From positions 124,001 through 188,000 of the IMG/VR virus record IMGVR_UViG_3300037010_003311: a stretch of 64,000 nt of DNA; one strand, 5' to 3'. Shown here one piece after another: positions 32,263 through 56,838 of this stretch (position 1 is the stretch's first letter; the number at the start of each line of letters is the position of its first letter). The translations under genes and the position numbers were made by a program. A model generated the notes under the pieces. It did not search any database and was not told the origin of the DNA. It was given only the letters and a program-made list of their open reading frames with translations.

Positions 32263-35200
32263 TTATAAAATTTCTTCACTCGTTTCATGATAAGTAGTAT
32301 TCGTTACATAATTAGAAACTGGCTTTACCAAATTAGAGAATGATTCCATTACATAAGTAGCACCAACTTTTAATTTAGTATCAGTATTGTAATCTGCGGC
32401 AACATCTAATGTTCGATTAAATAAATCGGCACCATTTATAAAAGCACTATTTTTAAAGTTTGTAACATTCGTAGAAACAACTGGGTCGGTATCTTTTTTG
32501 ATTAGATATTGATAATTAACTTCATCGAAATTAGTATAAATTAATCCAGGTAAGTTAAAGGTTGCTCTAATCGTATCTATATTGGTTTGGGTATAACTTA
32601 TCCCTGTACCAGCTAAATAAATGTTCCAACCAACTATGCCATAATTAGTACCAAGATTAGATACTGCATTGATAGTTAATGGATTAAATGAAAGATCTAA
32701 ACTGGAACCAACTTGTGATCTTTCTAAAAAGGTATCATCCCAGTTATCCTTATTACTATCATTAAATAAGGTTTGTAATATTGCCCAACTAGCCGAGGTA
32801 GCTTCTGGCCATTGTACAATACCAGCTTCATAGTATTTATTAGCCGAACCACCTATACTGGTAGCTAAACCAGTTAAAGACGTAAGCTTATTATTTTTAG
32901 CAATATAATTCCCAAAGACTGTGGTTGGACCACCAACTAAATCAGTAAGCATATTATTATTGCAACGAAAGTTGCCTTTTATAGTTGTAGGCAAACGATT
33001 ACCTATAATTGTAGTAAGACTTTTTAACTGGTTATCTTCAATAAAGAAATCTGATTCAGCTGTTGTATCCCAAATCCATTTAACATACTTACCAACTAAA
33101 TCTTTATATTTAGTAGCAGCTGTACCATTATTAGAAAGAATTTTATCTAATGTAAGATAGTTTCTAGATGATATAGAGGTAGCATTATCTATATTATCTA
33201 AGTGTACCCAGATAAAACTTGGTAAATGATTACTTAACCTGGATTCTTTTTCGATATTTATAAATTCGCGGGTACCTGGATCAACTAGGTTATTATTTAC
33301 TATCTCTTCATATTCAAAATAACGATTACTTAAATATACCGGACCGGTTGCTTTAATAATATAAGAATCAGTTACTTGATTGTAAGTTATGGTACAGCTA
33401 TCTTGTAAGCCATAGTAGCCTAAATCGCGCACAATAGTTTGTGGTGCACTAATATTTAATTCATAAATTTTATTTGCTCCATACCTCGATAACTGATCTA
33501 GATTCTCTAGCCCATTTATATATGTTGGCTCATTAAAAGAAAAATTATTATCATTTGGGTAAATGTTAATTGATTCGTTATTTAGTGCTGAAGTGAAAGT
33601 ACCAAAATCAGTTATTATCTCAATCTCATTATCAGTAACATTTTTATCATTTGGTGTCATAGCTTTGTAATTGATACCATTGAAGCTATTAGTGCGAACC
33701 GAATCGAAATAGTTATCAGTCACATATTCACTTTTAATAAAATTTATATCCCCAATCGGAGTACCATCATAATTAGTAATATCAATTATTTTAAAATAAT
33801 TTAATTCATACTCTGGTAAATAATCATGAGTGAATGTAGTAGAAATCTGGGAAAGAGTAGTACTAAAACTTATTTTAATATCTAAAGTAACATTATGTAA
33901 ATCTTCATACAACACTGGATTAGATATAAGATATGGATAAATTCTTATTTTATCACCAGGCATATTTTTATCTAACTTACTATTATAATTAATCCGGAAC
34001 ATATCCTGGAAAGGTACCCCGTTATCATTAATTATTTCTATTGCCGTCATTGTAGCACCAGTTACTGAACCAAAACCAAAATCAAATTCATTTAAAGTAG
34101 AGTATAGGTACTGTTTTGTTCCATCCATCTGAGGCCCACCAACCGAACCAGTTACTAAATTATATGCTGTAAACGGGATACGCTTAATAGTATAAAAATT
34201 AATAGTATAACTACCAGTTACACTAGATCTAGTTATAGTGTAGTTAATTTTATCAGTTGTTCCTGTGGATACTTGACTAGATACTAGTTGTAGGTCAGTA
34301 CTTATAGTTGACATATTGATCCAAGAGAAATACTTAATGAAAGAGTTATCTATTGGCTGGTATGGCTCTATTGGTAAAATTAAAGTATTACCAACATTAT
34401 GATTAGCCAGAAGCTTATCATTATAAAACATATTTAGTTTTATAATAACTGGGGCGCTCGCTTGGATTGGATTATTTTCACTATCGATTAATGAAAAACT
34501 ATATTTACCATTCTGGGTATCAGTGTGGTTTATTCTATTGAATTTAACATACTGACCAGTTACTGGCTTAGAAACTATTTCGAATGTTTCAGTAAATGGA
34601 AATATTGCCGGAGATGTTAATAATTCGGTTTCTGGTTGATAGTCTAAGATAAAGTCTTCAGTATAATATTTATTCTGGATTGCATCAAGCCCTATATCAT
34701 TATTGATCTCCATTATAAAATCAATTGAATTCTGCCCAGCGAAAATAATTAAATACCTTTCGATCTGTATAATTGCAGCCCTGGAATAATTAGAATAATC
34801 ATTACTAATAATCTGATAACTCGTAACTGGTTTCTGTATAGAAGAAGGGGTAATTATATATTCACCATTTCCGCGAGAACCAAGTATCTGATTAGTAAGT
34901 ACTTCTATTGCCCCACCTGTTGCAATGGACCCTAGAGATGGATCAACTTTAATAAGTTTAGAATCGGTACCATATACTAGTTCTCCTGTGCTATTATCAA
35001 CAGTTATAGATATAGTTCTATAATATAATGAACCATCAGTTCCATACTCAGGGAAAATATAACCATCGTTATTTTTATAGTAACTATAATCAAAATATTT
35101 ATTAACCGATTTCAAGTAGCAGAATTTACTAGCTATAGTTTCATCACTAGGAGTTTGGATTTCCGTAATAACTGCTCGGTTCTTATCAAATTGTGACATA

Positions 35201-38007
35201 TAAATTGTTTCAGTATGGAAGTTACTATTATTTGGAAGTTTCATAGTTCTAGTTAATGGTAAAGTAATTAGAGTATCTTGTGACCAAGCTCCAATATTGG
35301 TACCACTAAATTTAGGATTATTATCATCAATAGTATCCCCATTATTAATGACTCGGTTACCAAATCTAGTATCATTAATTATAAGTTTAATAATTGGTGT
35401 AAATGGTTGTGAATAATCAAGATTATCTACAATCTGTACTAATGGATTATTAGTAATACTTCCACTACTTATACCTTGGTTAAATACACCATTTTGACTA
35501 TATACCGATTTATCTCTTAAGGTAATAAAGCCATCGTTATAAACAACATTATAATTATCAGTTAAAATTACATAAAATTTGTAAGTAATATTATCTGCAG
35601 TAGTTATAGGCCTGGTATCATCGAAATAACATTTTTGAAATATTAAATCGTCTTTAGTGAATCCATAAACTGGTTCTGAGAACGTAAGAGTTACTATTTT
35701 CGTACGATTCGTAGTATCAGTAGTATCCACTGCGATACTAAAACTTGCGGTTGGCGTTGTTTTTGCAACAATCGATAGAGTTTTAGTAAGTACTACTTGC
35801 ATATCAGTTACATCAGTTAGTGTTATAGTTAAATGGTTATTACCAAGGGCAAATAGATATTCGATTGACCAAGTACCATCGGTATCTGAAATCGGTTCTG
35901 CTAAAATAGTTCCGGTATCTGAATTTTTAATTGTAATTTTAGAGTTTGGCTCAGTATCGGTTCCATATAGAGTTAAGTATTGTTTATTACTATAATCTTC
36001 GGCTATTGTTAAAATTGTAGCATTAGTAAGTTCTTGATATGGGGTAACCGGATTCAATTCATCATAAACATAAATATGATTAGACGTATTTTGATTTTGC
36101 TCATATATAATGAAAGCTGCATTAGAAAGTGCACTAGGAGTACCTATTGCATCAATAATACTATATTGTATAGTATTAGCCCCAATATTAAGATTTGGTA
36201 ATTGAAATATAAAACCATACTCATTTTCTGCTCTAGCATCAACGTTTAATGATTTAGAGAAAGCAAGAGTCGTACCAACATTTACACCATTTAAAAATAT
36301 ATTAACTGATGGTAGATCTCTAACTCCATTTTTATCTAAAATAACAAGAGGATCAATAAAACCAAGAATAAAGGGTTTCTGGTTACTAGTTGTACCATAC
36401 ATTTGCATCCGATGCAATTCATTAAAAGTTTCCCAACTATTTAAATTAGCTATCGTTTTAATATTTGGTACATAATAACTAGATATAATTGGAGCAGCTG
36501 GTAAATTACTCTGTACTGTAAAGTTTATAGCTGGTGAAGCTTTGCTTTCAAAGTTAGTATCTTTTACAGTGAAATAAATACTATGACTACCATCGGTTAA
36601 AGGATTAAATAAATATGTTTCAAAGCTACCATCCTGGTTAATAGAAGTTTGACCAAGTAAAGTCCTAACCCCAGCTATATCTTCGTAAATATTAATTAAA
36701 CTTTGATATTCGGAAATATTAATATTATAAGCTATTTTGGTAGCATATTCATTTATAGTTAATTTTTCTTTATTTTCATATATATGTAATAGTGTTGGAT
36801 CAATTATAGCGTTATTATCAATTACCATAGTTTCTGAAGAACTTGAAGCAGCATCTACTATGTCGGTTGGTATTGGAAACTGATTTAAATTAACAATACC
36901 ACTATTTATAACAGTTGGATCGAAACCAGCAACCGATGTAACCGGACTAACATTATTGACAGATGGTAACCTATTAATAAGACTATATAAATAAGTACCT
37001 TGTGTACTACCTTTTGGAATATAAATATTTTTAAGATTCTGCATCTTACAAACTATATCATGCCCAGAATGATTGATAGAATTTGAATATAATGTGAGTC
37101 TATCATAAAAAGTTAAACCCGTATATATTGGATCAGATTTTAATCTAAGAATATTATAATCACCAGTGCTAATATTAACTATTTTAAAGTCGTTGCTATA
37201 ATTATAAATATTTGGGATTACTTCATTATCTTTATAAATATAATTTACTAAGGTTGGAATAGTAAAAGTTTTAAATAGTTTTGGTATTACTATTCTTGAA
37301 TAAATATAAGTGGTGCCCACTATATCATAGGTTACAGCATTATCAATACTAAGAAACCATCTATTAATATTTATTGTCCCGGATGTATTGTAGGTAGCAT
37401 TATGTTTTTTTAGATTTAACTTATTATAGTTAGTTTGCGAACCTATATTATTGACACTAGTATCATTTAGAGTTATATAAAAATAACTATCGAAGTCAGT
37501 ATTTTGATGCAATAAATCTATAAAGTTACTAACTAGTGTACCAGCTGGTATCGTAAATGGTTGCTCATATACAACTATGGTTTCTAAGTTTACTGCGACT
37601 GGTTTATTAATTTCGATACTATTTAGTAATAGCTTAATAGTATTAGACCCTGAGGTCTGGGGAATTTGGAAAGTGATATCAGTTATATTTTCTCGGATTG
37701 CAGTAACTGGTGCAACCGTTTTAGTATCAACTGTATTGTAAAGTTGTACTCCTGTTTCGGCATTAACTACTCTATCACCAGATATATCTAAAACAGGTAT
37801 GGTAGTAAACCTATTCAGGTTCGCAGTAATTGTAACAGTATCTGAATTATCTAATAAGTTAGCATTAGGGATAAAAATATAATTGCTATCTCCATATCTA
37901 GGATAACTATTAGTGTTTAAATAATCAACCTCTTTTGCTGGATTAAAGGCATTGGTTAAGGTGAGATTCGCTAATTGCGAAATGTTAGTTATTGGTGTAG
38001 TTGCCAT
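32263..38007 (-). CDS. Very large virion protein with Ig-like domains and C-terminal LRR-like repeats
   Basis: 1914 aa; LTDGSHSI, GTWSI and TLTFSEPVYGF Ig-like signatures; N.LTSL.G.P..V.G.F.C repeats near the C-terminus. Confidence 0.65.
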   Translation of the reverse strand: MATTPITNISQLANLTLTNAFNPAKEVDYLNTNSYPRYGDSNYIFIPNANLLDNSDTVTITANLNRFTTIPVLDISGDRVVNAETGVQLYNTVDTKTVAPVTAIRENITDITFQIPQTSGSNTIKLLLNSIEINKPVAVNLETIVVYEQPFTIPAGTLVSNFIDLLHQNTDFDSYFYITLNDTSVNNIGSQTNYNKLNLKKHNATYNTSGTININRWFLSIDNAVTYDIVGTTYIYSRIVIPKLFKTFTIPTLVNYIYKDNEVIPNIYNYSNDFKIVNISTGDYNILRLKSDPIYTGLTFYDRLTLYSNSINHSGHDIVCKMQNLKNIYIPKGSTQGTYLYSLINRLPSVNNVSPVTSVAGFDPTVINSGIVNLNQFPIPTDIVDAASSSSETMVIDNNAIIDPTLLHIYENKEKLTINEYATKIAYNINISEYQSLINIYEDIAGVRTLLGQTSINQDGSFETYLFNPLTDGSHSIYFTVKDTNFESKASPAINFTVQSNLPAAPIISSYYVPNIKTIANLNSWETFNELHRMQMYGTTSNQKPFILGFIDPLVILDKNGVRDLPSVNIFLNGVNVGTTLAFSKSLNVDARAENEYGFIFQLPNLNIGANTIQYSIIDAIGTPSALSNAAFIIYEQNQNTSNHIYVYDELNPVTPYQELTNATILTIAEDYSNKQYLTLYGTDTEPNSKITIKNSDTGTILAEPISDTDGTWSIEYLFALGNNHLTITLTDVTDMQVVLTKTLSIVAKTTPTASFSIAVDTTDTTNRTKIVTLTFSEPVYGFTKDDLIFQKCYFDDTRPITTADNITYKFYVILTDNYNVVYNDGFITLRDKSVYSQNGVFNQGISSGSITNNPLVQIVDNLDYSQPFTPIIKLIINDTRFGNRVINNGDTIDDNNPKFSGTNIGAWSQDTLITLPLTRTMKLPNNSNFHTETIYMSQFDKNRAVITEIQTPSDETIASKFCYLKSVNKYFDYSYYKNNDGYIFPEYGTDGSLYYRTISITVDNSTGELVYGTDSKLIKVDPSLGSIATGGAIEVLTNQILGSRGNGEYIITPSSIQKPVTSYQIISNDYSNYSRAAIIQIERYLIIFAGQNSIDFIMEINNDIGLDAIQNKYYTEDFILDYQPETELLTSPAIFPFTETFEIVSKPVTGQYVKFNRINHTDTQNGKYSFSLIDSENNPIQASAPVIIKLNMFYNDKLLANHNVGNTLILPIEPYQPIDNSFIKYFSWINMSTISTDLQLVSSQVSTGTTDKINYTITRSSVTGSYTINFYTIKRIPFTAYNLVTGSVGGPQMDGTKQYLYSTLNEFDFGFGSVTGATMTAIEIINDNGVPFQDMFRINYNSKLDKNMPGDKIRIYPYLISNPVLYEDLHNVTLDIKISFSTTLSQISTTFTHDYLPEYELNYFKIIDITNYDGTPIGDINFIKSEYVTDNYFDSVRTNSFNGINYKAMTPNDKNVTDNEIEIITDFGTFTSALNNESINIYPNDNNFSFNEPTYINGLENLDQLSRYGANKIYELNISAPQTIVRDLGYYGLQDSCTITYNQVTDSYIIKATGPVYLSNRYFEYEEIVNNNLVDPGTREFINIEKESRLSNHLPSFIWVHLDNIDNATSISSRNYLTLDKILSNNGTAATKYKDLVGKYVKWIWDTTAESDFFIEDNQLKSLTTIIGNRLPTTIKGNFRCNNNMLTDLVGGPTTVFGNYIAKNNKLTSLTGLATSIGGSANKYYEAGIVQWPEATSASWAILQTLFNDSNKDNWDDTFLERSQVGSSLDLSFNPLTINAVSNLGTNYGIVGWNIYLAGTGISYTQTNIDTIRATFNLPGLIYTNFDEVNYQYLIKKDTDPVVSTNVTNFKNSAFINGADLFNRTLDVAADYNTDTKLKVGATYVMESFSNLVKPVSNYVTNTTYHETSEEIL

Positions 38008-38100: not shown

Positions 38101-38769
38101 CTAATTTAATGGAGACCGATTATAATTAATGTTTAAGATTTGCGCATATTTATAACCATACATATGACCATTTACTTTTAATGTGTTTAATGTAGCATCG
38201 ATTGATCTTAAATCTGGATTAGGTTTAGTTTCTTGGTTAACCACTTTTAAACCATCCATTATAAAACTTATATCTGATTCATTTAATTCATATGCTTCCC
38301 AACCACTAGATGGTTGACATTTGAAATTCCAGTGGTTAGAGCTAAGGATTGAATAGGTTCCGGCTTTTATTATTTCACCACCCCAATTACCCCACGCCTT
38401 AGGTATTGGTCTACTAATAATTTTACCAATATTATTCGCGATACCATGATCTGGATGCAGATCACTTTCCGGAAATAGTACTATTTCCGGTTTATAAGTA
38501 GACATCAAAGAACTCAAATCAGTTACAATTGCATGAATATCATTATTAGTAAGTTCTGTATCAAAATACAATGGATGGTTCATAACAATATTTAAACTTG
38601 CATAAAATTCTTTGACCTCTTTAAACCGATTATCAGTATCGTGCCTTCTACCAGAACATAAGGTATAAATCATTATTCTATATCCAGCATCCATATATTT
38701 TTTTATAATACCGAAGCATCCAAAAATTGCATCATCTAGATGAGCTTCAATTATTAGAATTGTTTTCAT
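38101..38769 (-). CDS. PIG-L / LmbE family N-acetylsugar deacetylase
   Basis: EAHLDD and HPDH metal-binding motifs. Confidence 0.85.
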   Translation of the reverse strand: MKTILIIEAHLDDAIFGCFGIIKKYMDAGYRIMIYTLCSGRRHDTDNRFKEVKEFYASLNIVMNHPLYFDTELTNNDIHAIVTDLSSLMSTYKPEIVLFPESDLHPDHGIANNIGKIISRPIPKAWGNWGGEIIKAGTYSILSSNHWNFKCQPSSGWEAYELNESDISFIMDGLKVVNQETKPNPDLRSIDATLNTLKVNGHMYGYKYAQILNINYNRSPLN

Positions 38770-40020: not shown

Positions 40021-40548
40021 CTATTTATTCTCTCTTCTATCATGAATCAATAATTTTTTATTTGTAACTATTTGATCAGTCATTTTAAATAATTGGCTTG
40101 GGCTAAAAATATTATCATGTGGAAGACAACAAGTTGAATAACCGTAAGTAATATTATTTATAGAACTTAATTTATCTTCTAATTCCGAAATTTGGAATTC
40201 TTTTAATAATATTCCAAATTCGTCACCACCAATACGAAATATTTCCGAGCCGATACAATCTCTAAATGTGGATTCTATATTACTAGATACCTCTTTTATT
40301 AATTTATCACCAGCGTCGAAACCATCTAAACGATTAATATTATGTAAATTATTAATATCAATCAGCACTAATAAAAAATTTTTCTTCTCATAAGTACATT
40401 GTTCGTATAATGTATTAAGATAATTATCAAAATCTTTACGTAATTTAAAACCAGTAAGAAAATCATATTTATAACGTTTAACTTCTTCTTTTAGATATTG
40501 TACTTCATCTATTAAATTAAAGAAATTTTGTTCATTAAATTCAATCAT
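40021..40548 (-). CDS. GGDEF-domain protein (putative diguanylate cyclase)
   Basis: DFLTG, LIDINNL, GFDAGDKLI, FRIGGDEF; likely start ATG 40548 with AGGGAG RBS. Confidence 0.9.
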   Translation of the reverse strand: MIEFNEQNFFNLIDEVQYLKEEVKRYKYDFLTGFKLRKDFDNYLNTLYEQCTYEKKNFLLVLIDINNLHNINRLDGFDAGDKLIKEVSSNIESTFRDCIGSEIFRIGGDEFGILLKEFQISELEDKLSSINNITYGYSTCCLPHDNIFSPSQLFKMTDQIVTNKKLLIHDRRENK

Positions 40549-40560
40549 ATAATACTCCCT

Positions 40561-40643
40561 ATGACAAGAAAAATAGATTAACCAAGCAGTTGTTGGATCT
40601 GATGGGGAAGAATGGATTGTCATCAACTGCTTGGTTAATCTAT
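40561..40643 (-). terminator. Terminator/attenuator immediately upstream of GGDEF RBS
   Basis: Perfect 20-bp stem (40573-40592/40624-40643) followed by TTTTCTTGTCA, a variant of the TTTTCCTGTCG tail. Confidence 0.7.
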
Positions 40644-40654
40644 CTAAATTCGAG

Positions 40655-40835
40655 GGGGACCTAGTAGCTACTAGGTCCCCTGGTACATATGTTTATACTC
40701 TAAAACAAACTCCGTACCACTTCTAAAGGCATGAACTAACATAAGGATGCTCGTTCATCTACCTTTGGCCAAAGATTATAGACTAGCTTTAGGATTTTGA
40801 ATTGGATCACTAAATCCATCGTCGCTACCCGGACT
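40655..40835 (-). ncRNA. Candidate multi-hairpin RNA / leader
   Basis: Non-coding and GC-richer than flanks; successive stems AAAGGT/GCCTTT + ATGAAC/GTTCAT, TGGTAC/GTACCA + GTTTGT/ATAAAC, and a 26-bp perfect palindrome at 40655-40680. Mismatches resolve as G-U on the minus strand. Confidence 0.5.
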
Positions 40836-40843
40836 TATAATTT

Positions 40844-41209
40844 TTAAAAAATATTTTTGATTAAATTACTAGTAGGAACTAAATCCGATTTATTCATAAT
40901 AATAAATGGTCCGCGTTCATCACTCGTAGTATTAATTGTTACGCGATTCTCTTCCATAATTTCGCGATACTGATTAGTCTTAGCGACCGCCTCATCACGA
41001 ATGGTAAGTAAAAAAGCATTTTTACATTTTAAAATTTGATAAGAGCTTCTAGTGTAAGAAGTCCCACCTTCCGAAAATACATATGGATATCCCTCACTAT
41101 CATAACCAGCAAAATGCCCTTCATTAATACCAAATTCGGTATTGTGTTCTTGGTACATAACTGGATCATTAAGTTCCAAAACTATTTCATTATACCTGTC
41201 GCATCTCAT
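40844..41209 (-). CDS. Hypothetical protein
   Basis: 121 aa; AAGGA RBS; upstream TATAGAAATAT motif. Confidence 0.7.
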   Translation of the reverse strand: MRCDRYNEIVLELNDPVMYQEHNTEFGINEGHFAGYDSEGYPYVFSEGGTSYTRSSYQILKCKNAFLLTIRDEAVAKTNQYREIMEENRVTINTTSDERGPFIIMNKSDLVPTSNLIKNIF

Positions 41210-41327: not shown

Positions 41328-42065
41328 TCATACTATACATCTTGGTTTATTCGTTTTAACCGATCCAATATTAAGTATTTTATACAATTCGTTATCTTGA
41401 GTCATTATGTGAGTGCACCCTTCATCGATGGCAATTGCTAATTCATTTTGCCAAATAGTACCATCCCAAGCGTTAGTCTCTGGTAAATTAACAGAAGCCA
41501 TAAAAATACGTTTAGTTTCATCGTTTGGTGAAACTTCATCATTGTTGTCTTCTACAATGTACCAATCTTCAGCAAGTACATCGGTTTGTGATGCTAACCA
41601 CGGTACAATTTTGTTATCTGCGGTTTTCATATCAATATGGGCATTGTAATTGATTTCGGTACCTTCCGGATAAATACCAAGTAACGGTGCACGATTCACT
41701 TTAAACGTACTACCGGGTACAAGAAATAAAAACATACCTTTGCCATTCCAGCCAGTTCTAGCAACTTTATTACCCGTCTTTAATGCTTGGATGGCTTCCC
41801 CAAAATTTAAACCACTTGCAATTGGACTAGGTTCTGATTCCACAAATGGTTCAAAATTAGCATGGAAGTATTCTTTTGTCACTAACCATTGATCATCATG
41901 ATTCCTTGGGTTACGAGCTACCATGTCTCCCTGTTTAGGTTTATTGCCCACTGTGTCTACTGGCATCGAAATCGTTGATATATCTAATCCAAACATAACT
42001 TCTTCAAAAGTTACTGGTCTAAGTTCAGCTATTGCTGATCTTTTATATTTTTTAAAATTTTTCAT
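41328..42065 (-). CDS. Tad2/DUF2829 anti-defence sponge domain fused to extra N- and C-terminal domains
   Basis: LNFGEAIQALKTGNKVARTGWNGKGMFL...VPWLASQTDVLAEDW is the DUF2829/Tad2 signature. Confidence 0.85.
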   Translation of the reverse strand: MKNFKKYKRSAIAELRPVTFEEVMFGLDISTISMPVDTVGNKPKQGDMVARNPRNHDDQWLVTKEYFHANFEPFVESEPSPIASGLNFGEAIQALKTGNKVARTGWNGKGMFLFLVPGSTFKVNRAPLLGIYPEGTEINYNAHIDMKTADNKIVPWLASQTDVLAEDWYIVEDNNDEVSPNDETKRIFMASVNLPETNAWDGTIWQNELAIAIDEGCTHIMTQDNELYKILNIGSVKTNKPRCIV

Positions 42066-42410: not shown

Positions 42411-42486
42411 TGGTGGAGAATAGCGGGGTCGAACCGCTGACCTACTGCTTGCAAGGCAGTCGCTCTCCCAACTGAGCTAATTCCCC
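42411..42486 (-). tRNA. tRNA-Ala(TGC)
   Basis: GGGGAAT TA GCTC..GAGC G ACTGC CT TGC AA GCAGT..AGCGG TTCGACC CCGCT ATTCTCC A CCA; G3-U70 pair; encoded CCA. Confidence 0.97.
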
Positions 42487-42506
42487 ATTAAAATATGCAA
42501 TTCAAG

Positions 42507-42618
42507 TGTCTAAGTATAACTTAATCATTAAGAATTTTATACAACAAGGAAATCATAAAGGAGGACAAAGAATGGGAAATCAAAGAACGGCAACATGGAT
42601 TAAGGTTATACTTAGACA
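42507..42618 (-). ncRNA. Candidate sRNA: 20-bp closing stem with ~70-nt C/U-rich loop
   Basis: TGTCTAAGTATAAC(C)TTAATC stem; the loop contains TTTGTCCTCCTTTATGATTTCCTT; AACAAAT motif directly upstream. Confidence 0.5.
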
Positions 42619-42693
42619 ACTATTTGTTATCACTATTTAAAATACCAAGCAAGTGCAACTTAGGTCTTATTTTGTGTAGGAACTATTTAAACA

Positions 42694-42773
42694 TGGCTGG
42701 GGAATGTAGGATTCAAACCTACAATCTCTATATTGTAAATATAGAGCTCTAATCATTTGGAGTAAATTTTCCC
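42694..42773 (-). pseudogene. Degenerate tRNA-Val(TAC)-like element
   Basis: Intact anticodon stem CTATA-TTTACAA-TATAG and T stem GTAGG/CCTAC, but T loop TTTGAAT and mispaired acceptor and D stems. Confidence 0.65.
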
Positions 42774-42778
42774 ATTAT

Positions 42779-42854
42779 TGGATCGGAGTGGAGGGTTCGA
42801 ACCTCCGACACGCAGCGCCAAAAGCTGCTGTTCTACCAACTGAACTAACTCCGA
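42779..42854 (-). tRNA. tRNA-Gln(TTG)
   Basis: TCGGAGT TA GTTC..GAAC A GCAGC TT TTG GC GCTGC..GGAGG TTCGAAC CCTCC ACTCCGA T CCA; U1-A72 pair. Confidence 0.93.
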
Positions 42855-43045: not shown

Positions 43046-44050
43046 TTAACGAGTTTGATAATTTACCATATCCGAAATGAGTTCATCTAACTTTTTATTA
43101 TATTTCGATATAGTTAATGGAATAAACATATTTTTAAGCATCCGTTTATTAATCTCTTCTTTGTAAACTTTAGTGTACTTAATCATATCTAAGTTCGAAT
43201 ATAAATCTTCTTTTTTACAAATTTTTATAATTTTACTAAGAACCTCTGTTAAATAATTATCACAAATATTTTGATCAGTTACTGTAAAACCAATATTAAA
43301 AATTAAGTTTTCTCGGTTTTTTGAACACTCAATAATTTTTAATAATTCCGGTTTAACATATTTTGATTCTATATTTGTGAACACTCTACGGATTTTTGGA
43401 TTTATAATACACGGTTTATTATTGATAACATTATGAATTAAAGTTGGTAATACCATCCCTGATTCTGGCTCATGGCCTATTCCAGTAATATTAAAAAATC
43501 TTACTATTTGTACATTAGGCAATTCTCTAAATAAGAACTCGGATACTAATTTTTGGCTCGCGTAGCCACCACGTTTGCTCAAAAGCGGGTTACTTATAGA
43601 TATTGGGGAATTATCAATTATATCCCCATTCTCTCCAAATACTTCGCTACTACTAGCAAACACTAATGGTATTTTACTCTTTTCAATAAAGTTATACACT
43701 TTAAGATTAATAGTTAACGCATCAGCAATTGTATTTTGATTAAGAATATTATTAACTCCAACTGGACTAGCAAGATGTATACAACAATCAAAAAAATGTT
43801 TCTTAAACTTAGGAAGTTTCTCTTTTACTAAATCTATATTATAACGAATAAGATTTTTATCATTGTAGTTATCTAAAAGGCGGCTACGACCATAATGCGT
43901 AATAACCTTAGGTTCATCCCCACCAATCATATAATTATATTCTTTATCAATTATATGAACTCTATAATTAAGATCTAATAGCCATTTAGTTATATGACTT
44001 CCAATAAAACCAGCTCCTCCAATAATTAAAATATTTTTCTTTTTTTTCAT
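43046..44050 (-). CDS. NAD-dependent nucleotide-sugar epimerase/dehydratase (extended SDR)
   Basis: GGAGFIG, HLASPVG, ASSSEVFG, YASQK, RFFN. Confidence 0.9.
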   Translation of the reverse strand: MKKKKNILIIGGAGFIGSHITKWLLDLNYRVHIIDKEYNYMIGGDEPKVITHYGRSRLLDNYNDKNLIRYNIDLVKEKLPKFKKHFFDCCIHLASPVGVNNILNQNTIADALTINLKVYNFIEKSKIPLVFASSSEVFGENGDIIDNSPISISNPLLSKRGGYASQKLVSEFLFRELPNVQIVRFFNITGIGHEPESGMVLPTLIHNVINNKPCIINPKIRRVFTNIESKYVKPELLKIIECSKNRENLIFNIGFTVTDQNICDNYLTEVLSKIIKICKKEDLYSNLDMIKYTKVYKEEINKRMLKNMFIPLTISKYNKKLDELISDMVNYQTR

Positions 44051-44129
44051 TATTAGTCCTTGGTATTAATTGAATTTATCTATATATTTCTATAATAGGT
44101 TAAATCGTTGATATCCGAACTATCAGTAA

Positions 44130-44918
44130 TTAGAACCAACCCAATGCTAACATAGTTTCTAATTCTACAATTGAATAAGATTGTAGGTTATCATACCTAT
44201 AAATACTTTTTTTAGAAATCAAATTATTTAAAAACATTTTAGTTACTTGGCAAGTTTGTTTAATAAAGTTTTCCTTATTAATAATGAAATTTACAATTTG
44301 ATCTTTGTCACCAACAAAACTACCATTCTTTAATTGAAATATTAAACCTTTATTTCTTGTACTATCATATACACGTGGAATATTTAAAATAAGATATTCT
44401 TTGATATTAGAACGAATATATCTTTCCATTGCTAATTTAAATACCGCATAATTATTAAATTCTTCTATATCAACCGTTGGTGCACTAAAACCTAGATTAT
44501 TAATCTTTACTGGTATCTCCTGGAATGTAGCCATACTACTAGCAAATATTAGCTTACATTTTAATGCTTTAGCAAGTTGTACGATATTAATAGTACCATC
44601 AATCATGGTTTGGCTAGTTTTAACTTCATTTTGGAAATCAAACTTATCACTAGGGCTTGCAAAATGAATAATGCAATCAACATTTTTAAATGACCGGTAC
44701 ATACTAACGATTTTCGAATCGCGTATATCTGAATCAATATAAATAATTTTATCAAATCGTTTAGTAAGTTCTGGCTTTAGTAATCCAATAAGATAACCTT
44801 TGCCACCAGTTATTAACGCTGTACCCATTATCCGTTTATTAATTTTCTTTTGTTCATCTTCAAATATAAATGTATTGGTGTTTACTATTTTGATATCATT
44901 TTGTTTCTTGGAGTTCAC
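44130..44918 (-). CDS. Second SDR nucleotide-sugar epimerase/reductase
   Basis: ITGGKGYLIG, IHFAS, FASS, YAVFK; true start may be ATG 44828. Confidence 0.8.
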   Translation of the reverse strand: MNSKKQNDIKIVNTNTFIFEDEQKKINKRIMGTALITGGKGYLIGLLKPELTKRFDKIIYIDSDIRDSKIVSMYRSFKNVDCIIHFASPSDKFDFQNEVKTSQTMIDGTINIVQLAKALKCKLIFASSMATFQEIPVKINNLGFSAPTVDIEEFNNYAVFKLAMERYIRSNIKEYLILNIPRVYDSTRNKGLIFQLKNGSFVGDKDQIVNFIINKENFIKQTCQVTKMFLNNLISKKSIYRYDNLQSYSIVELETMLALGWF

Positions 44919-45369
44919 TATCTTTTCCTAATCTTATATAAAATATTCCATTTGGATAACTATTTATTTCGGCTAAATTATTTTTAAACTCATATAATGT
45001 TTCTGGATCATAAAAAGGAATATCCAGCATCTTCATTATTTCGTAATCATCATCTAATTGATGACCAATACCAAATTTTTCATAACCATACTTACCAGCA
45101 TTACAAATTATAATTTTACCGAAGTGTGATCCAAAGTGTTTACAACTAAATTTTAACTGTTCGAGCCTATGAATAATAAATCCGGCAACACCATAAATGT
45201 AAACGGTGTTACCTTCCGAAGCAATACCAGCTGCTACATTAACTAAATTGCTTTCACCAAGATTACAATTTATAATTTTAGCTTTAGATGGAAATCGTTC
45301 GGTATTCCACATATCTGCATGCAGTAGGTAATCAGTATCTTTTAAACTATCAGCAAAGGTCATGCGCAT
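44896..45369 (-). CDS. Transketolase-like pyrimidine-binding subunit (short)
   Basis: NCNLGESNLVNVAAGIASEG, F..HRLEQLK, G.GH, YIRLG. Confidence 0.85.
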   Translation of the reverse strand: MRMTFADSLKDTDYLLHADMWNTERFPSKAKIINCNLGESNLVNVAAGIASEGNTVYIYGVAGFIIHRLEQLKFSCKHFGSHFGKIIICNAGKYGYEKFGIGHQLDDDYEIMKMLDIPFYDPETLYEFKNNLAEINSYPNGIFYIRLGKDSELQETK

Positions 45370-45423
45370 AATAATTCCTTTTTAAGGCAAATATACGATT
45401 TCTATGTTCGATATAATTTATCA

Positions 45424-46173
45424 TCATTTAATAAACCTTTCCAGAAACTTCATCTTTTTTAATTTATCGCTAATGGTAAGTCCATTAAGATGTTTTAAAC
45501 TTTCTAGATTTTTATAGTGCCATTTAACCGAATCAATTTCCATCTCTAGTACTCCATCACCCTTTATCGTATGAATAAAGATAACCACTGGTTTTACTTT
45601 CAGTTCCTGACAATTGGATACTTTTTTAAATTGCTCATCAAAGCTTCGTACCAAATTTATTTTTGGATTAATATATATATCCCAGACCTCCCAATCATTT
45701 ATTTCAAACAATTGTATGTATGAGGAATGTAACTTATTGTCAGCGAGAGGGCCAGTTAATTGCATTTTATTAAAATCTATAGTTACTACCATTTGTAATT
45801 GGTTTTGGCCAATGAACTGGATCGCTTCATATGTAGGCCCCATCTGTAAAGCGGCATCGCTAATATTAACCCATGTTGGTTTATCGGATACTAGACTAAT
45901 TCCAGCCGCTACCCCTAAAGCGTTACCAAGAGTCTCTTCGCTGAAATTTACAAATGGTAACTCTTTATGCTTAATACCATAAGAATATTCAGAAATTGGT
46001 TTAATTGTGGTATCTAACCAACCATTCTTTTCCCAAGTATAATAATAAGCTTCTGCCCCAAACGGTTTACCAATTACTATATTCCAATCTTTAGTTACTA
46101 ACCCATTACTAAATATATAATCTAAATAGTATAATTGTGAAAGAGCACTAGGTATATGCATATTATAACCCAA
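45424..46173 (-). CDS. Transketolase-like TPP-binding subunit
   Basis: HIPSALS, TLGNALGVAAG, SDAALQMG..YEA...DFNKMQ, HTIKGDGV, WHY. Confidence 0.85.
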   Translation of the reverse strand: MGYNMHIPSALSQLYYLDYIFSNGLVTKDWNIVIGKPFGAEAYYYTWEKNGWLDTTIKPISEYSYGIKHKELPFVNFSEETLGNALGVAAGISLVSDKPTWVNISDAALQMGPTYEAIQFIGQNQLQMVVTIDFNKMQLTGPLADNKLHSSYIQLFEINDWEVWDIYINPKINLVRSFDEQFKKVSNCQELKVKPVVIFIHTIKGDGVLEMEIDSVKWHYKNLESLKHLNGLTISDKLKKMKFLERFIK

Positions 46174-47026
46174 ACAATGATTTTAAATCTTCTGTTATGG
46201 AATACCCAATTGAATACTCCATCGGTGTATATTCATTTAAAATTTTTATTAACTTAGTATCTATTTCTCTATTAAAGACTGGAGCGATTAATTTATATGA
46301 ATCATTCATACCAAATAATTTGCAGTTAAATATTTCATAATTTAACCGAATCATAATTCTTTTATGATTAAACAGTTTTAATTTATTATTTTGATCGGTC
46401 GTGTCTAATATACAACTATTTTCGTAAATATTTGGGAAATAGCTAAAAATATTATTTTTTGTATATAATGGAAATTCATAAAATCTTTTATATAAATCAA
46501 TTATTAAATCAATATCATTTTTAAGTAGTGGCTCAAAAGGTTTCCAAATAGAACCAGATAAAGCACTGGTTCTATAATATGGTCTCGGCCCATCTTTTAT
46601 TTCAAAATCATTAACGGTAGGATTCGTTTTCGAAAGTACTTTAACCGCTTCAATATACTCACTAAAACTTGGAATATATGGTTCATTACTAGTAGCAGCT
46701 GCAATTAAAGCTTCATGACAATTAATCATCTGCTTTAAATCAATACTACACTCAATTTCCAAATCTTTAAGTAACTTATTACTAATTTTAAAATTTTCAA
46801 TTATTTCAGGTGTAATATTTGCTGCATTATAGAAGTTATTATTATAATGATCTTCTAAACTAGCAAGAGATTTATAATAATAAGTAAAGTTAATATCGCG
46901 GAATACAAACCCCGCCGAGTCATCTATAAATATTATAGGATTAAGAGCCGTTGCTGCATCATCAGCGTACAGCTCATTAATGTATTTCGTTTCCGCCTCA
47001 ATTATGGCTTGCCTCGATTCGTTCAT
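46163..47026 (-). CDS. Hypothetical protein in tailoring cluster
   Basis: Likely start 47026 (AAGGGGG RBS); overlaps the downstream gene. Confidence 0.65.
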   Translation of the reverse strand: MNESRQAIIEAETKYINELYADDAATALNPIIFIDDSAGFVFRDINFTYYYKSLASLEDHYNNNFYNAANITPEIIENFKISNKLLKDLEIECSIDLKQMINCHEALIAAATSNEPYIPSFSEYIEAVKVLSKTNPTVNDFEIKDGPRPYYRTSALSGSIWKPFEPLLKNDIDLIIDLYKRFYEFPLYTKNNIFSYFPNIYENSCILDTTDQNNKLKLFNHKRIMIRLNYEIFNCKLFGMNDSYKLIAPVFNREIDTKLIKILNEYTPMEYSIGYSITEDLKSLFGL

Positions 47027-47067
47027 GGTTTCCCCCTTTAAATAGATTTGAATCACAGTTAAGCGAA

Positions 47068-48042
47068 TCAATAATTACATATACTAAATGTTAATAATTC
47101 GGAATCCGAAACATTTGAATTATCTATTTTTATTTCAGAAAGAATAGTTTCAATCTCTTTTATTTTAATAGTTTTTGTTTCGTTTTCGTAATGTATTTCT
47201 ACTTCATCTTTATTTATAAAAAATGATGCTGATGGGTTATAGTTCAACGAGGTTTTATCTAATTTCGAAGTATTGTACATATCAAATATTTTTTCTATAT
47301 CGGAAAACTTATCGATAATAGGTTCCCGGCCATAATTAAGAAATTTAAAATTATCTCGAACAAAGTCGAAGCATTCTTTATAGCTTTTAATAAATGTTAT
47401 AGTTTTATATATTTTGAACTTATTTAATACACTTGCTTCAGTAATATTAAATGGTTCAAAGATTCTATAATCGAACCCAATATTAATATAGATATTCTCT
47501 AAATTAAGAGTTTTTAAATACTCTAAAAATCCTAAATACTTTTTAGGATCTTCTGTAACAACTAAATTCAAATTAACATAACCATAATATTTATATGTTG
47601 TTATAATATTTTGAATTATAAATTTTAGTGACCATCTTGGTCCGTTTGTACGTTCTGGGTCCTCGATATGTGGACTAATAACCATATCAACATTCTCTAT
47701 TTTATAGAGCTCTTTAATTATAGTATTAAACTTTTTTATCGGTATTTCACCATTAGTGAAAACATAACCTTTATAATTTTCAATGACTTGTTGCTTATAT
47801 CGCATTAGCTCAATAAAATATGGAGCTAATAATAGTTCACCACCAGCTTCCATAAATATTTTACCTTGCTTTGGCATTACATGATTAAAGTATGGTACTA
47901 TATCGAAGTTTCCAGAATGGTTTTCGGTTATTGTATTATTTAGAAAATTATAACAGAAGTCACATTTTAAATTACATTCGGTGTACCACTCGACACATAT
48001 AATAATATCATCTGGATCAATACTGATTCGGTGGGAACTCAT
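47068..48042 (-). CDS. Radical SAM protein
   Basis: CNLKCDFC, GGE, FTNG. Confidence 0.9.
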   Translation of the reverse strand: MSSHRISIDPDDIIICVEWYTECNLKCDFCYNFLNNTITENHSGNFDIVPYFNHVMPKQGKIFMEAGGELLLAPYFIELMRYKQQVIENYKGYVFTNGEIPIKKFNTIIKELYKIENVDMVISPHIEDPERTNGPRWSLKFIIQNIITTYKYYGYVNLNLVVTEDPKKYLGFLEYLKTLNLENIYINIGFDYRIFEPFNITEASVLNKFKIYKTITFIKSYKECFDFVRDNFKFLNYGREPIIDKFSDIEKIFDMYNTSKLDKTSLNYNPSASFFINKDEVEIHYENETKTIKIKEIETILSEIKIDNSNVSDSELLTFSICNY

Positions 48043-48626
48043 TAATAATCCTTAATTATAAACATCGGGTACTTAGGAGCTTTCATTTGGAAAGCATAAT
48101 CAACTAAAAATTTTTTTTCATCTTCGAAATTATTAAGAAATGGTTTTTGTACAAAAATATAATTATTAAAAATTAAAAAGGTATCTATCAATGGTACAAT
48201 CCCAGTAGTTAAAACATGATCGAATAGTAGATCGGCAAACTTAATACCACAATATTGTTTAATAATCAAATTATCTTTATTTGGATAGTTCTTTATAAAC
48301 TCTATAATATCTTGATCAGGTAAAGCGTTAGGATTTATTATGTTAGTATAATTATTATTAATTTTATAGAAAAAGTTTTTATCCTGGATGCGTGGGGTAA
48401 ATACTTCTAATTTAGTATGATCGCTTGCAACCTTAAAGCCATAATGTTCGTGAGCAAGAAGTGTACTAACTACATCAGACTGCTTGAAATCAAGAATCTT
48501 TTCTATAAGTGGTTCATAAAAGCCATAATCATCTAAAAATTCTTGAATCTTTCTAGTTTTAATATATTTAATTTTTTCTTCATTGCTAAAAATTTCATCA
48601 CCTTTTATTTGAATAATATTTCCCAT
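48042..48626 (-). CDS. Hypothetical protein in tailoring cluster
   Basis: Likely start 48626 (GAGG RBS); TAATG coupling to the next gene. Confidence 0.65.
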   Translation of the reverse strand: MGNIIQIKGDEIFSNEEKIKYIKTRKIQEFLDDYGFYEPLIEKILDFKQSDVVSTLLAHEHYGFKVASDHTKLEVFTPRIQDKNFFYKINNNYTNIINPNALPDQDIIEFIKNYPNKDNLIIKQYCGIKFADLLFDHVLTTGIVPLIDTFLIFNNYIFVQKPFLNNFEDEKKFLVDYAFQMKAPKYPMFIIKDY

Positions 48627-48636
48627 ATTAATACCT

Positions 48637-53014: not shown

Positions 53015-53079
53015 TAATAATACCTTTGTGTAGATAATTGATTTTTCTCTTAAAGATAGTAGTTACTCTACACAATTCG

Positions 53080-56766: not shown

Positions 56767-56814
56767 TTTTACTCCTCTATTTTCTTTAACCTTTATTTTT
56801 AACGCGTGAGAAAT

Positions 56815-56838
56815 ATAGCGGTGGTTTCCCACCGCTAT
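56815..56838. terminator. GC-rich hairpin upstream of helicase
   Basis: ATAGCGGTGG-tttc-CCACCGCTAT (GAAA loop on the minus strand). Confidence 0.45.

What the first reader, a model, noticed from the sequence alone, without database searches (positions are those of the whole stretch)
40021..40548. Minimal phage diguanylate cyclase lacking the inhibitory I-site
Seen: a short N-terminal coiled coil and DFLTG lead into a stand-alone GGDEF domain with intact GGDEF. The RxxD position reads CIGS, and DxDxFKxxND is altered to DINNLHNINR. Known: RxxD mediates c-di-GMP feedback inhibition. Inference: an unregulated cyclase that could shut down motility or receptor display (superinfection exclusion) or perturb nucleotide-signalling immunity; the substitutions might alter activity or product.
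Basis: partly seen in the sequence, partly recalled or inferred. Interest (0 to 1): 0.6.

Follow-up and report, generated by a model that had tools for sequence, protein, structure and literature searches.

The report
Small phage c-di-GMP synthase gene
An uncultivated jumbo phage from microbial mats carries a stripped-down, probably always-on enzyme that makes the bacterial signal c-di-GMP; the enzyme type is well known, but this phage-only version sits beside genes that disarm bacterial immunity.

Summary
Window 40021-40548 (- strand) is a 175-aa ORF with a good ribosome-binding site. It has a three-heptad N-terminal helix, the DFLTG entry motif and a GGDEF domain (Pfam E=1e-19).

The feedback I-site position reads CIGS, and the DxDxFKxxND loop reads DINNLHNINR.

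These are not private oddities. The gene belongs to a clade seen only in phage or metagenome DNA, with 32 core members of 147-222 aa. In that clade RIGGDEF, the metal Asp, the guanine-reading Asn and the phosphate Lys never vary, and the guanine-reading Asp is kept in 30 of 32. RxxD is absent from all 32, and the loop Lys is usually His.

The changed loop residues bind GTP through their main chain in PleD, so a changed product is unlikely. dN/dS is 0.13-0.39.

Best reading: a constitutive, product-insensitive diguanylate cyclase that raises c-di-GMP in the infected cell. This phage record shows no EAL, HD-GYP or PilZ gene, so the signal would act through host receptors.

Small phage GGDEF genes are already annotated elsewhere, so this is a new member of a known kind.

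One lead is worth following. The gene pairs with a Tad2-like sponge gene in two separate subclades, and with Acb1/Acb2 or NAMPT genes in others.

The parts
40021..40548 (-). Coding sequence of the 175-aa mini-GGDEF protein (P0001), stop codon included
   Evidence: ORF and translation; Pfam GGDEF E=1.1e-19; dN/dS 0.13-0.39 against close homologues
40555..40559 (-). Shine-Dalgarno sequence GGGAG, 6 nt before the ATG
   Evidence: Read from the sequence
40474..40533 (-). N-terminal helix (residues 6-25) with three heptads; putative dimerising coiled-coil stalk
   Evidence: AF2 helix 6-25. The best structural matches are zipper/stalk plus GGDEF structures 3i5c, 6ttr and 6zxb. The homodimer prediction gave no verdict.
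40024..40470 (-). GGDEF domain (residues 27-175), starting at YDFLTG, with a 16-residue deletion after the GGDEF strand
   Evidence: Pfam; profile alignment to DgcR 6zxb over positions 16-168; Foldseek TM 0.65-0.76 to solved GGDEF domains
40330..40359 (-). Phosphate-binding loop and base-reading stretch DINNLHNINR (residues 64-73): D64 = metal Asp, H69 in place of the loop Lys, N72 = guanine Asn
   Evidence: Sequence. In the 32 core members D64 and N72 are invariant and position 69 is His in 28 and Lys in 4.
40246..40257 (-). I-site position (residues 98-101) reading CIGS instead of RxxD
   Evidence: Sequence; RxxD absent in 53 of 56 small phage GGDEFs
40216..40230 (-). GGDEF catalytic motif (residues 107-111), preceded by invariant R105
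   Evidence: Sequence; RIGGDEF invariant in alignment A1 and in the 32 core members
40549..40843 (-). 295-nt structured region upstream of the gene. It holds a perfect 13-bp hairpin (40655-40680) and a 23-bp hairpin (40573-40643) followed by a U-run just before the ribosome-binding site.
   Evidence: Inverted repeats. The fold of 40530-40850 gives z=-5.9 against shuffles. No Rfam family reaches threshold. The region is about 97% identical in L160, so covariation cannot be tested.
41328..42065 (-). Neighbouring 245-aa protein: a small N-terminal domain fused to a Tad2-like (anti-Thoeris sponge) domain at residues 85-172. It is the only Tad2-like gene in the 226.7-kb record, two genes upstream.
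   Evidence: Pfam PF11195 E=5.6e-28; single copy in the genome; closest solved structure ModTad2 9eib, E=3e-23; the N-domain is free-standing elsewhere
40844..41209 (-). 121-aa ORF of unknown function between the Tad2-like gene and the GGDEF gene; conserved (75% identity) next to the GGDEF gene in L006

Best explanation
The gene encodes a small cytoplasmic diguanylate cyclase. A three-heptad N-terminal helix zips two copies together and holds the two GGDEF half-sites, each loaded with GTP and Mg2+, in a productive arrangement. No sensor domain and no RxxD feedback site are present. The enzyme should therefore be on whenever it is expressed and should not be throttled by its product. It converts 2 GTP into 3',3'-c-di-GMP in the infected cell. 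This phage record shows no EAL, HD-GYP or PilZ gene, so the c-di-GMP would act through the host's own receptors. The likely effect is a push towards the sessile, non-motile, matrix-producing state, with remodelling of surface appendages and glycans, which would also hinder superinfection. Shown here: domain identity, fold, conservation of catalytic and guanine-reading residues, absence of the I-site, purifying selection, and a clade seen only in phage DNA. Inferred: dimerisation through the helix, constitutive activity, c-di-GMP as the product, and the downstream host effect.
For: - Domain identity: Pfam GGDEF E=1.1e-19 and TIGR00254 E=8.5e-15.
- Fold: the AF2 model has pLDDT 87. Its best structural matches are the GCN4-zipper-WspR GGDEF fusion 3i5c, DgcB coiled coil plus GGDEF 6ttr, and DgcR 6zxb, with TM 0.69-0.76. 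The profile aligns to DgcR across positions 16-168.
- Active site: five of the seven PleD reference residues listed in PMC6629876 are kept. These are D64, N72, D81, D109 and K165. In the 32 core members D64, N72, R105, GGDEF and K165 are invariant, and D81 is kept in 30.
- Tolerated changes: the replaced loop positions act through main-chain atoms in PleD (PMC7288161).
- Selection: dN/dS is 0.13-0.39.
- Link to c-di-GMP turnover: two other lineages place a c-di-GMP-type phosphodiesterase gene directly beside the mini-GGDEF. These are an EAL gene in L008 and an HD-GYP gene at L029:5403-5978.
- No turnover or receptor genes in this phage: no EAL, HD-GYP or PilZ was found in the record.
- Habitat: microbial mat and sediment metagenomes, that is, biofilm habitats.
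- Precedent: GGDEF genes are annotated in Bordetella and Pseudomonas phages, and lysogens of one such phage over-produce biofilm (PMC8471281).
Against: - No biochemical data exist for any member of this clade.
- Two of the seven reference residues are changed. K332 is His here. The R446 equivalent, H169, is not conserved in the clade, so phosphate binding may be weaker or different.
- The 16-residue deletion removes part of the canonical domain.
- The homodimer prediction did not reach its mark and counts neither way.
- The host is unknown, so I cannot say whether it has c-di-GMP receptors.
- No RNA data show when the gene is expressed.
- The neighbours point at least as much to immune evasion as to motility control.
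Confidence: 0.55

Rival explanations
1. Counter-defence enzyme. The cyclase is part of an immune-evasion island, and its nucleotide product interferes with host nucleotide-based immunity. It could occupy effector or receptor sites as a competitor, or it could supply a decoy dinucleotide that keeps sponge-sensing guard systems of the Panoptes type silent while the phage's own sponge mops up immune signals.
For: - In this 226.7-kb record the only Tad2-like gene lies about 780 bp from the GGDEF gene.
- The pair recurs in relatives of 77-81% identity, with the gene order changed (L006, L007, L161).
- It recurs again in a distant subclade, L045 and L041, at about 38% identity. There GGDEF, the Tad2-like gene and the small N-domain gene are nearly the only genes of the 12-kb loci that have homologues in this phage.
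- In L012 the gene overlaps the stop of an Acb1 gene and lies near an Acb2/Tad1-hairpin gene.
- In L026 it lies two genes from a NAMPT gene.
- The Panoptes paper shows that sponges trigger a guard which is held off by a constitutively made cyclic dinucleotide from a minimal palm-domain cyclase (PMC12657218).
Against: - Most lineages show no such neighbour. Across 27 clusters the neighbours are mainly replication and nucleotide-metabolism genes and small unknown ORFs.
- Acb1 is usually 6-87 kb away.
- Accessory genes cluster in phage genomes anyway, so adjacency is weak evidence.
- The guanine-reading residues predict 3',3'-c-di-GMP, not the 2',3'-c-di-AMP or 3',2'-cGAMP used by the known Panoptes systems.
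- c-di-GMP activates, rather than blocks, STING-type CBASS effectors (PMC10680739).
- There is no PADLOC match.
Confidence: 0.2
2. Catalytically weak or inactive GGDEF that works by binding. It would hold GTP or c-di-GMP, or dock onto a host c-di-GMP enzyme or receptor, rather than synthesise the signal.
For: The K332 and R446 equivalents are replaced and the domain is shortened. Phages are known to manipulate host cyclases by binding them, as with peptides that bind YfiN (PMC8085984).
Against: Strict invariance of RIGGDEF, the metal Asp, the guanine Asn and K442 across 32 divergent members is what catalysis demands. It is more than binding usually needs. The protein has no RxxD, which is the usual c-di-GMP-binding site of degenerate GGDEF receptors.
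Confidence: 0.1
3. Altered product: the changed loop makes the enzyme produce another nucleotide, such as cGAMP, c-di-AMP, linear pppGpG or a non-canonical linkage.
For: Palm-domain cyclases can switch products with few substitutions (PMC12657218).
Against: N72 and D81, the two residues that read guanine, are kept. The changed positions contact phosphates through the backbone. Adjacent EAL or HD-GYP genes in two lineages fit c-di-GMP.
Confidence: 0.08
4. Decaying passenger gene with no function in infection.
For: One relative, L008, carries a truncated 117-aa copy.
Against: The frame is intact, the ribosome-binding site is strong, dN/dS is 0.13-0.39, and there is a clade of 32 conserved members.
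Confidence: 0.03

Closest known systems
DgcR of Leptospira (Rec - coiled coil - GGDEF; PDB 6zxb/6zxc/6zxm)
   Same: Best profile match (E=5e-20), aligned from the stalk helix through the C-terminal AD...AK motif. It has the same stalk-then-DxLTG-then-GGDEF layout.
   Different: DgcR has a phospho-receiver domain that controls the stalk, plus an I-site. The phage protein has neither, and it lacks 16 residues after the GGDEF strand.
GCN4 leucine zipper - WspR GGDEF fusion (PDB 3i5c) and DgcB coiled coil + GGDEF (PDB 6ttr)
   Same: Top structural matches (Foldseek E about 1e-10, TM 0.69-0.73). Each is a short parallel zipper placed directly before a GGDEF domain, which is the architecture proposed here.
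   Different: 3i5c is an engineered protein. WspR and DgcB keep RxxD product inhibition and belong to regulated bacterial pathways.
PleD of Caulobacter (reference diguanylate cyclase)
   Same: D327, N335, D344, E370 and K442 all have equivalents: D64, N72, D81, D109 and K165.
   Different: K332 is His here. The R446 equivalent is H169 and varies in the clade. The R359xxD I-site is absent. There are no receiver domains.
Annotated phage GGDEF proteins: Bacillus phage G gp350, Bacillus phage SP-15 'diguanylate cyclase' (183 aa), Bordetella phage CN1/LK3 (152 aa), Pseudomonas Yuavirus
   Same: All are small GGDEF proteins encoded by phages. They are the closest viral folds in BFVD. Phage G also matches by tblastn at 32% identity. 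LK3 lysogens form more biofilm (PMC8471281).
   Different: They are at most about 30% identical, and none came up as a member of the DINxLH clade. No isolate phage in INPHARED has a close relative. None has been characterised biochemically, as far as my searches show.
mCpol / OptS of the Panoptes defence system
   Same: A minimal stand-alone palm-domain cyclase of similar size that constitutively makes a cyclic dinucleotide (PMC12657218).
   Different: It is host-encoded, lacks the GGDEF motif, reads adenine and makes 2',3'-c-di-AMP. The phage protein matches Pfam GGDEF only; no mCpol family appeared among matches up to E=1.
Hypr GGDEF enzymes (cGAMP-producing GGDEFs)
   Same: Same domain family.
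   Different: From my own knowledge, Hypr enzymes have Ser in place of the D344-equivalent Asp. Here it is Asp (D81), kept in 30 of 32 clade members.

Membership tests
GGDEF diguanylate cyclase (Pfam PF00990 / TIGR00254) | Significant match to the family profile above the curated cut-off | tested here: met
   71.3 bits against a cut-off of 23.8, E=1.1e-19. TIGR00254 scores 54.8 against 37.4. Only profile positions 2-96 of 161 align.
GGDEF diguanylate cyclase (Pfam PF00990 / TIGR00254) | Intact GG[D/E]EF motif with the preceding Arg | tested here: met
   R105-I-G-G-D-E-F111; invariant in the clade
GGDEF diguanylate cyclase (Pfam PF00990 / TIGR00254) | Metal-binding Asp (PleD D327) and guanine-reading Asn and Asp (N335, D344) | tested here: met
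   D64, N72 and D81, with the PleD spacing of 9 between the Asn and the Asp. They are kept in 32, 32 and 30 of 32 core members. They are reported as essential (PMC7288161).
GGDEF diguanylate cyclase (Pfam PF00990 / TIGR00254) | Phosphate-binding side chains K442 and R446, and the loop Lys K332 | tested here: not met
   K165 (=K442) is invariant. The R446 equivalent is H169 and varies in the clade. K332 is His in 28 of 32 members. K332 contacts the phosphates through its main chain in PleD, so this is a partial failure only.
GGDEF diguanylate cyclase (Pfam PF00990 / TIGR00254) | The GGDEF alpha/beta fold | tested here: met
   AF2 pLDDT 87. Foldseek probability 1.00 and TM 0.65-0.76 to more than 40 solved GGDEF domains. 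There is a 16-residue deletion.
GGDEF diguanylate cyclase (Pfam PF00990 / TIGR00254) | Homodimerisation that brings two GTP-loaded half-sites together | tested here: inconclusive
   The heptad pattern and stalk-type structural matches favour it. The complex prediction median of 0.35 fell below the 0.42 mark, so there is no verdict.
GGDEF diguanylate cyclase (Pfam PF00990 / TIGR00254) | Synthesis of c-di-GMP from GTP | not testable with these tools
   Needs an enzyme assay
Product-inhibited diguanylate cyclases (I-site class) | RxxD motif five residues before GGDEF | tested here: not met
   The position reads CIGS. RxxD is absent in 53 of 56 small phage GGDEFs.
mCpol / Cas10-type minimal polymerase | Match to the mCpol or Cas10 palm families rather than to GGDEF | tested here: not met
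   GGDEF was the only enzyme family among Pfam matches up to E=1, and no PADLOC model matched.
Known anti-defence protein families (Tad1, Tad2, Acb1, Acb2) | Sequence membership of the GGDEF protein itself | tested here: not met
   The GGDEF protein matches none of them. Only its neighbours do.

The most novel reading that the evidence does not exclude
The mini-GGDEF and the Tad2-like sponge, with its small fused N-domain, form a mobile counter-defence module. The sponge removes host immune nucleotides, while the phage cyclase floods the cell with a cyclic dinucleotide. That nucleotide either keeps sponge-sensing guard effectors (Panoptes-like logic) liganded and silent, or competes at immune receptors. 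This would be the first phage-made signalling nucleotide used against bacterial immunity.
Probability: 0.1. Interest if true: 0.85.

Novelty: new member of a known kind. Interest (0 to 1): 0.4.

Why it matters
Phages are known to destroy or soak up bacterial signalling nucleotides. Phages that make one are barely studied. A feedback-free cyclase of about 150-220 aa is a simple handle on how a virus rewires a host's sessile-or-motile decision, here in a biofilm habitat. It could also serve as a compact tool for raising c-di-GMP. The recurring position beside anti-Thoeris, anti-CBASS and NAD-salvage genes raises the testable possibility that c-di-GMP synthesis is itself part of immune evasion. 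As it stands, the gene is an ordinary enzyme in an interesting place.

Tried and rejected
- Homodimer prediction (complex prediction, two copies): median score 0.35, below the 0.42 mark. No verdict; not used as evidence either way.
- PADLOC defence models: no match.
- Near-identical or distant DNA in isolate phages: none. tblastn gave only hits of at most 33% identity, many of them on bacterial-looking records.
- Rfam on the structured upstream region: no family at threshold. A sub-threshold SNORD12 match is a hairpin artefact. ARAGORN found no tRNA-like gene there. Comparison with L160 is too close (about 97%) to test covariation.
- A general Acb1 link: rejected. Acb1 is present in 10 of 35 records but lies 6-87 kb from the GGDEF gene in all of them. 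Only L012 has it adjacent.
- A general EAL, HD-GYP or receiver partner: rejected. EAL was found in 1 of 34 other records and Response_reg in 1 of 35. Adjacency occurs only in L008 and L029.
- A conserved operon partner: rejected. The Pfam tally of 150 neighbours from 27 clusters shows no family in more than three.
- A c-di-GMP-binding Tad2: unlikely. The window's Tad2-like domain is of the short-insertion type. It aligns with a 10-residue gap against SptTad2, and in HgmTad2 the long insertion forms the cyclic-dinucleotide pocket.
- Bacterial origin or prophage copies: among 185,579 species genomes the best 80 matches are multi-domain bacterial proteins in every case I checked. The exception is one 203-aa copy on a 9-kb contig binned with an archaeal MAG, probably a phage contig.
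- Expression data: no RNA run holds the region. Read laying was not used because only DNA contigs were on offer.
- The large representative-protein search was not run.
- Host identity could not be determined.

Full report
**What is there**

Window 40021-40548 on the minus strand is an uninterrupted 175-codon ORF. Its ATG is preceded by GGGAG at a 6-nt spacing, and its closest homologues start at the same methionine. A longer TTG-initiated frame reaching 40626 begins inside an upstream hairpin, and nothing supports it.

The protein matches Pfam GGDEF at 71 bits, E=1.1e-19. It also matches NCBIfam TIGR00254 at E=8.5e-15, along with many named diguanylate cyclases. It has no PADLOC match.

- DFLTG at residues 29-33.
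- DINNLHNINR at residues 64-73.
- CIGS at the I-site position, residues 98-101.
- GGDEF at residues 107-111.

I checked these against the DNA and by script.

**The genome**

The window lies in a single 226,657-bp viral record of about 30% G+C. CheckV rates it 81% complete. It carries a T4-type large terminase, very large structural-looking ORFs and tRNA genes.

It has no near relative among 50,697 isolate phage records. The same DNA turns up in microbial-mat and sediment metagenomes. It is therefore an uncultivated jumbo phage whose host is unknown.

**Structure**

AlphaFold2, run on an 18-sequence alignment, gives mean pLDDT 87. The model has a helix over residues 6-25 followed by the GGDEF alpha/beta fold. 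The hydrophobic residues F9, L12, V16, L19, V23 and Y26 follow a 3-4 heptad spacing.

Foldseek's best solved matches are proteins in which a short parallel coiled coil leads straight into a GGDEF domain:
- the GCN4 zipper-WspR fusion (3i5c);
- DgcB coiled coil plus GGDEF (6ttr);
- phytochrome-linked cyclases;
- DgcR (6zxb).

A profile of the family aligns to DgcR from the stalk to the C-terminal AD...AK motif, with one 16-residue gap just after the GGDEF strand. That deletion, together with a divergent C-terminal half, explains why Pfam aligns only positions 2-96 of its 161-position model. 'Minimal' is a fair description.

**Active site**

I used the PleD reference residues as listed in PMC6629876 and described in PMC7288161.

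| PleD residue | Role | Here | In 32 core clade members |
|---|---|---|---|
| D327 | metal binding | D64 | invariant |
| K332 | phosphate loop (main chain) | H69 | His in 28, Lys in 4 |
| N335 | reads guanine | N72 | invariant |
| D344 | reads guanine | D81 | kept in 30 |
| E370 | metal and alpha-phosphate | D109 | invariant |
| K442 | phosphate | K165 | invariant |
| R446 | phosphate | H169 | not conserved |

The spacing between N72 and D81 matches the spacing between N335 and D344 in PleD. The review states that F330, F331 and K332 bind the phosphates through main-chain atoms, and that D327, N335 and D344 are the residues reported as essential.

I see no sequence basis for a changed base specificity.

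**The family**

The word-index protein search found 17 relatives of 102-205 aa. All came from metagenomes, and two sit on contigs of 224 kb and 236 kb that carry T4-like genes.

A scan of IMG/VR gave 65 loci. About 38 of them encode small proteins of 141-222 aa. The 32 core members fall into 27 clusters at 60% identity.

Within the 32 core members:
- R105, GGDEF, D64, N72 and K165 are invariant.
- D81 is kept in 30.
- H69 is His in 28 and Lys in 4.
- The R446 position varies.

RxxD is absent in 53 of 56 small phage GGDEFs. The three that have it are outliers that also keep the canonical DxDxFKxIND.

Among one genome for each of 185,579 prokaryotic species, the best matches I checked are multi-domain bacterial proteins of 427-795 aa. 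The exception is one 203-aa copy on a 9-kb contig that was probably mis-binned.

A quick maximum-likelihood tree puts the 32 core phage proteins, the window's included, on one side of a branch with SH-aLRT 97. On the other side are 34 bacterial GGDEFs and 8 other phage GGDEFs. This was a quick search, not the finished careful one, and the bacterial rows were picked as the family's best matches.

Close homologues show dN/dS of 0.13-0.39. The gene is therefore a maintained member of a clade seen only in phage DNA. The missing I-site and the DINxLH loop are clade signatures, not decay.

**Most likely mechanism**

Two GTP-loaded GGDEF domains must meet for catalysis. That requirement is established knowledge of the family, not something I tested. 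Here the only element upstream of the domain is a short zipper, with no sensor and no I-site. The simplest reading is a constitutive, product-insensitive diguanylate cyclase.

The record has no recognisable EAL, HD-GYP or PilZ gene, so the signal would be read by host proteins.

In two other lineages a phosphodiesterase gene sits directly beside the mini-GGDEF. One is an EAL gene in L008, where the GGDEF copy is truncated. The other is an HD-GYP gene overlapping the GGDEF start in L029. Both fit c-di-GMP as the currency.

I cannot show what the phage gains. In a mat habitat the obvious options are to hold the infected cell in the sessile state, to shut down flagella or pili, or to change surface glycans and so exclude other phages. 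Annotated GGDEF genes in Bordetella and Pseudomonas phages, and hyper-biofilm lysogens of one of them, are the nearest precedent (PMC8471281).

**The neighbourhood lead**

Two genes upstream, at 41328-42065, lies a 245-aa protein whose residues 85-172 form a Tad2-like domain (E=5.6e-28). It is the only such gene in the record.

In relatives whose GGDEF is 77-81% identical (L006, L007, L161), a 113-115-aa Tad2-like gene lies immediately downstream instead. The pair has therefore stayed together through a rearrangement.

In a distant subclade (L045 and L041, GGDEF about 38% identical) a Tad2-like gene again follows the GGDEF stop codon directly, although the L041 copy is degraded. In those 12-kb loci only three genes have homologues at this locus in the window's genome: GGDEF, the Tad2-like gene and a 78-aa gene. 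L045 has one further match elsewhere in the genome.

The 78-aa gene corresponds to the N-terminal 75 residues of the window's fusion protein. The same small domain stands free next to a Tad2-like gene in L163. In L162 it follows a NAMPT plus NMNAT/Nudix pair.

Other counter-defence neighbours of mini-GGDEF genes are Acb1 and Acb2 in L012 and NAMPT in L026.

There is evidence against a tight functional link:
- Only 4 of 35 records have any Tad2-like gene, and in one of those it lies 28 kb away.
- Acb1 is usually far away.
- The neighbour tally across 27 clusters shows no dominant partner.
- The window's Tad2-like domain is the short-insertion type, closest to ModTad2. It lacks the long insertion that gives HgmTad2 its picomolar c-di-GMP pocket (PMC10680739). 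The phage cyclase would therefore not saturate its own sponge, but there is also no direct chemical link between the two proteins.

My reading is that the mini-GGDEF often lies in counter-defence islands. That is suggestive but not decisive.

The Panoptes work shows that sponges can trip a guard held off by a constitutively made dinucleotide from a minimal palm-domain cyclase (PMC12657218). A phage cyclase that refills such a pool is conceivable. However, the predicted product here (3',3'-c-di-GMP) is not the known Panoptes signal.

**Comparison with what is known, and novelty**

By profile, motif, fold and five of seven reference residues, this is a GGDEF-family protein. Enzyme activity and dimerisation are untested; the homodimer prediction gave no verdict. 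It is not an I-site-regulated cyclase, not an mCpol, and by its D81 not a Hypr-type cGAMP synthase.

Small GGDEF proteins are already annotated in isolate phages: Bacillus phage SP-15 at 183 aa, Bordetella phage CN1 at 152 aa, and Bacillus phage G gp350. My literature searches found no biochemical study of any phage GGDEF and no description of this clade. Those searches cover open-access papers and preprints only.

I file it as a new member of a known kind, with a moderately interesting clade-level twist.

**Limits**

- No enzyme data, no host assignment and no expression data.
- The tree is a quick one.
- My gene calls in related loci come from a simple ORF picker.
- Neighbourhood statistics are informal, because related loci are not independent.

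Noticed in passing
window 41328-42065 (-); L045:3581-3817; L041:2887-3123; L162:6001-6213; L163:767-1102: The Tad2-like neighbour is a fusion protein. Its first 75 or so residues are a small domain that stands alone (70-111 aa) in other phages. In L045 and L041 it lies 2-3 kb from the mini-GGDEF. In L163 it lies next to a 244-aa Tad2-like gene. In L162 it follows a NAMPT plus NMNAT/Nudix (NAD-salvage) pair. It looks like an uncharacterised component of NAD/Thoeris counter-defence.
   Followed up: partly
window 40549-40843 (- strand): The 295-nt gap before the GGDEF gene folds far better than shuffles (z=-5.9). It has a perfect 13-bp GC-rich hairpin (40655-40680) and a 23-bp hairpin (40573-40643) followed by a U-run just before the ribosome-binding site. 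It could be tandem terminators, an attenuator or a small RNA. No Rfam family matches. It is absent in L006, where the upstream gene abuts the GGDEF gene.
   Followed up: partly
L029:5403-5978 and L008:7950-9149: In two other phage lineages a c-di-GMP-type phosphodiesterase gene sits directly beside the mini-GGDEF. One is an HD-GYP gene (191 aa, HHHEKW...GYP) that overlaps the GGDEF start. The other is an EAL gene (230 aa) after a truncated 117-aa GGDEF.
   Followed up: partly
L012:1282-3835: An Acb1 gene whose stop overlaps the mini-GGDEF start. It is followed by a ParM/MreB-like gene, an Acb2/Tad1-hairpin gene and, further on, a protein resembling a histidine kinase: a dense counter-defence island.
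   Followed up: no
window 43046-54874 and 38101-38769 (-): A run of sugar-chemistry genes: two NAD-dependent epimerase/dehydratases, a transketolase-like protein, three radical-SAM proteins and a family-2 glycosyltransferase, plus a PIG-L-type deacetylase just downstream of the GGDEF region. They could modify DNA, virions or the host surface.
   Followed up: partly
window 42411-42854 (-): Three tRNA genes (Ala-TGC, Val-TAC, Gln-TTG) between the Tad2-like gene and the sugar cluster.
   Followed up: no
window 3588-8573, 27710-31717, 32263-38007 (-): Very large ORFs of 1661, 1335 and 1914 aa, probably structural or tail-fibre proteins. The 1914-aa ORF ends about 2 kb from the GGDEF gene.
   Followed up: no
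window 11121-12686, 58522-59868, 60773-62083 (-): Two DUF7487 proteins and a further radical-SAM/4Fe-4S protein. An SF1 helicase lies at 55240-56832.
   Followed up: no
L006:2906-3274: A 122-aa stand-alone receiver (Response_reg) gene follows the GGDEF-Tad2-like pair in the 81%-identical relative. It has no counterpart in the window.
   Followed up: partly
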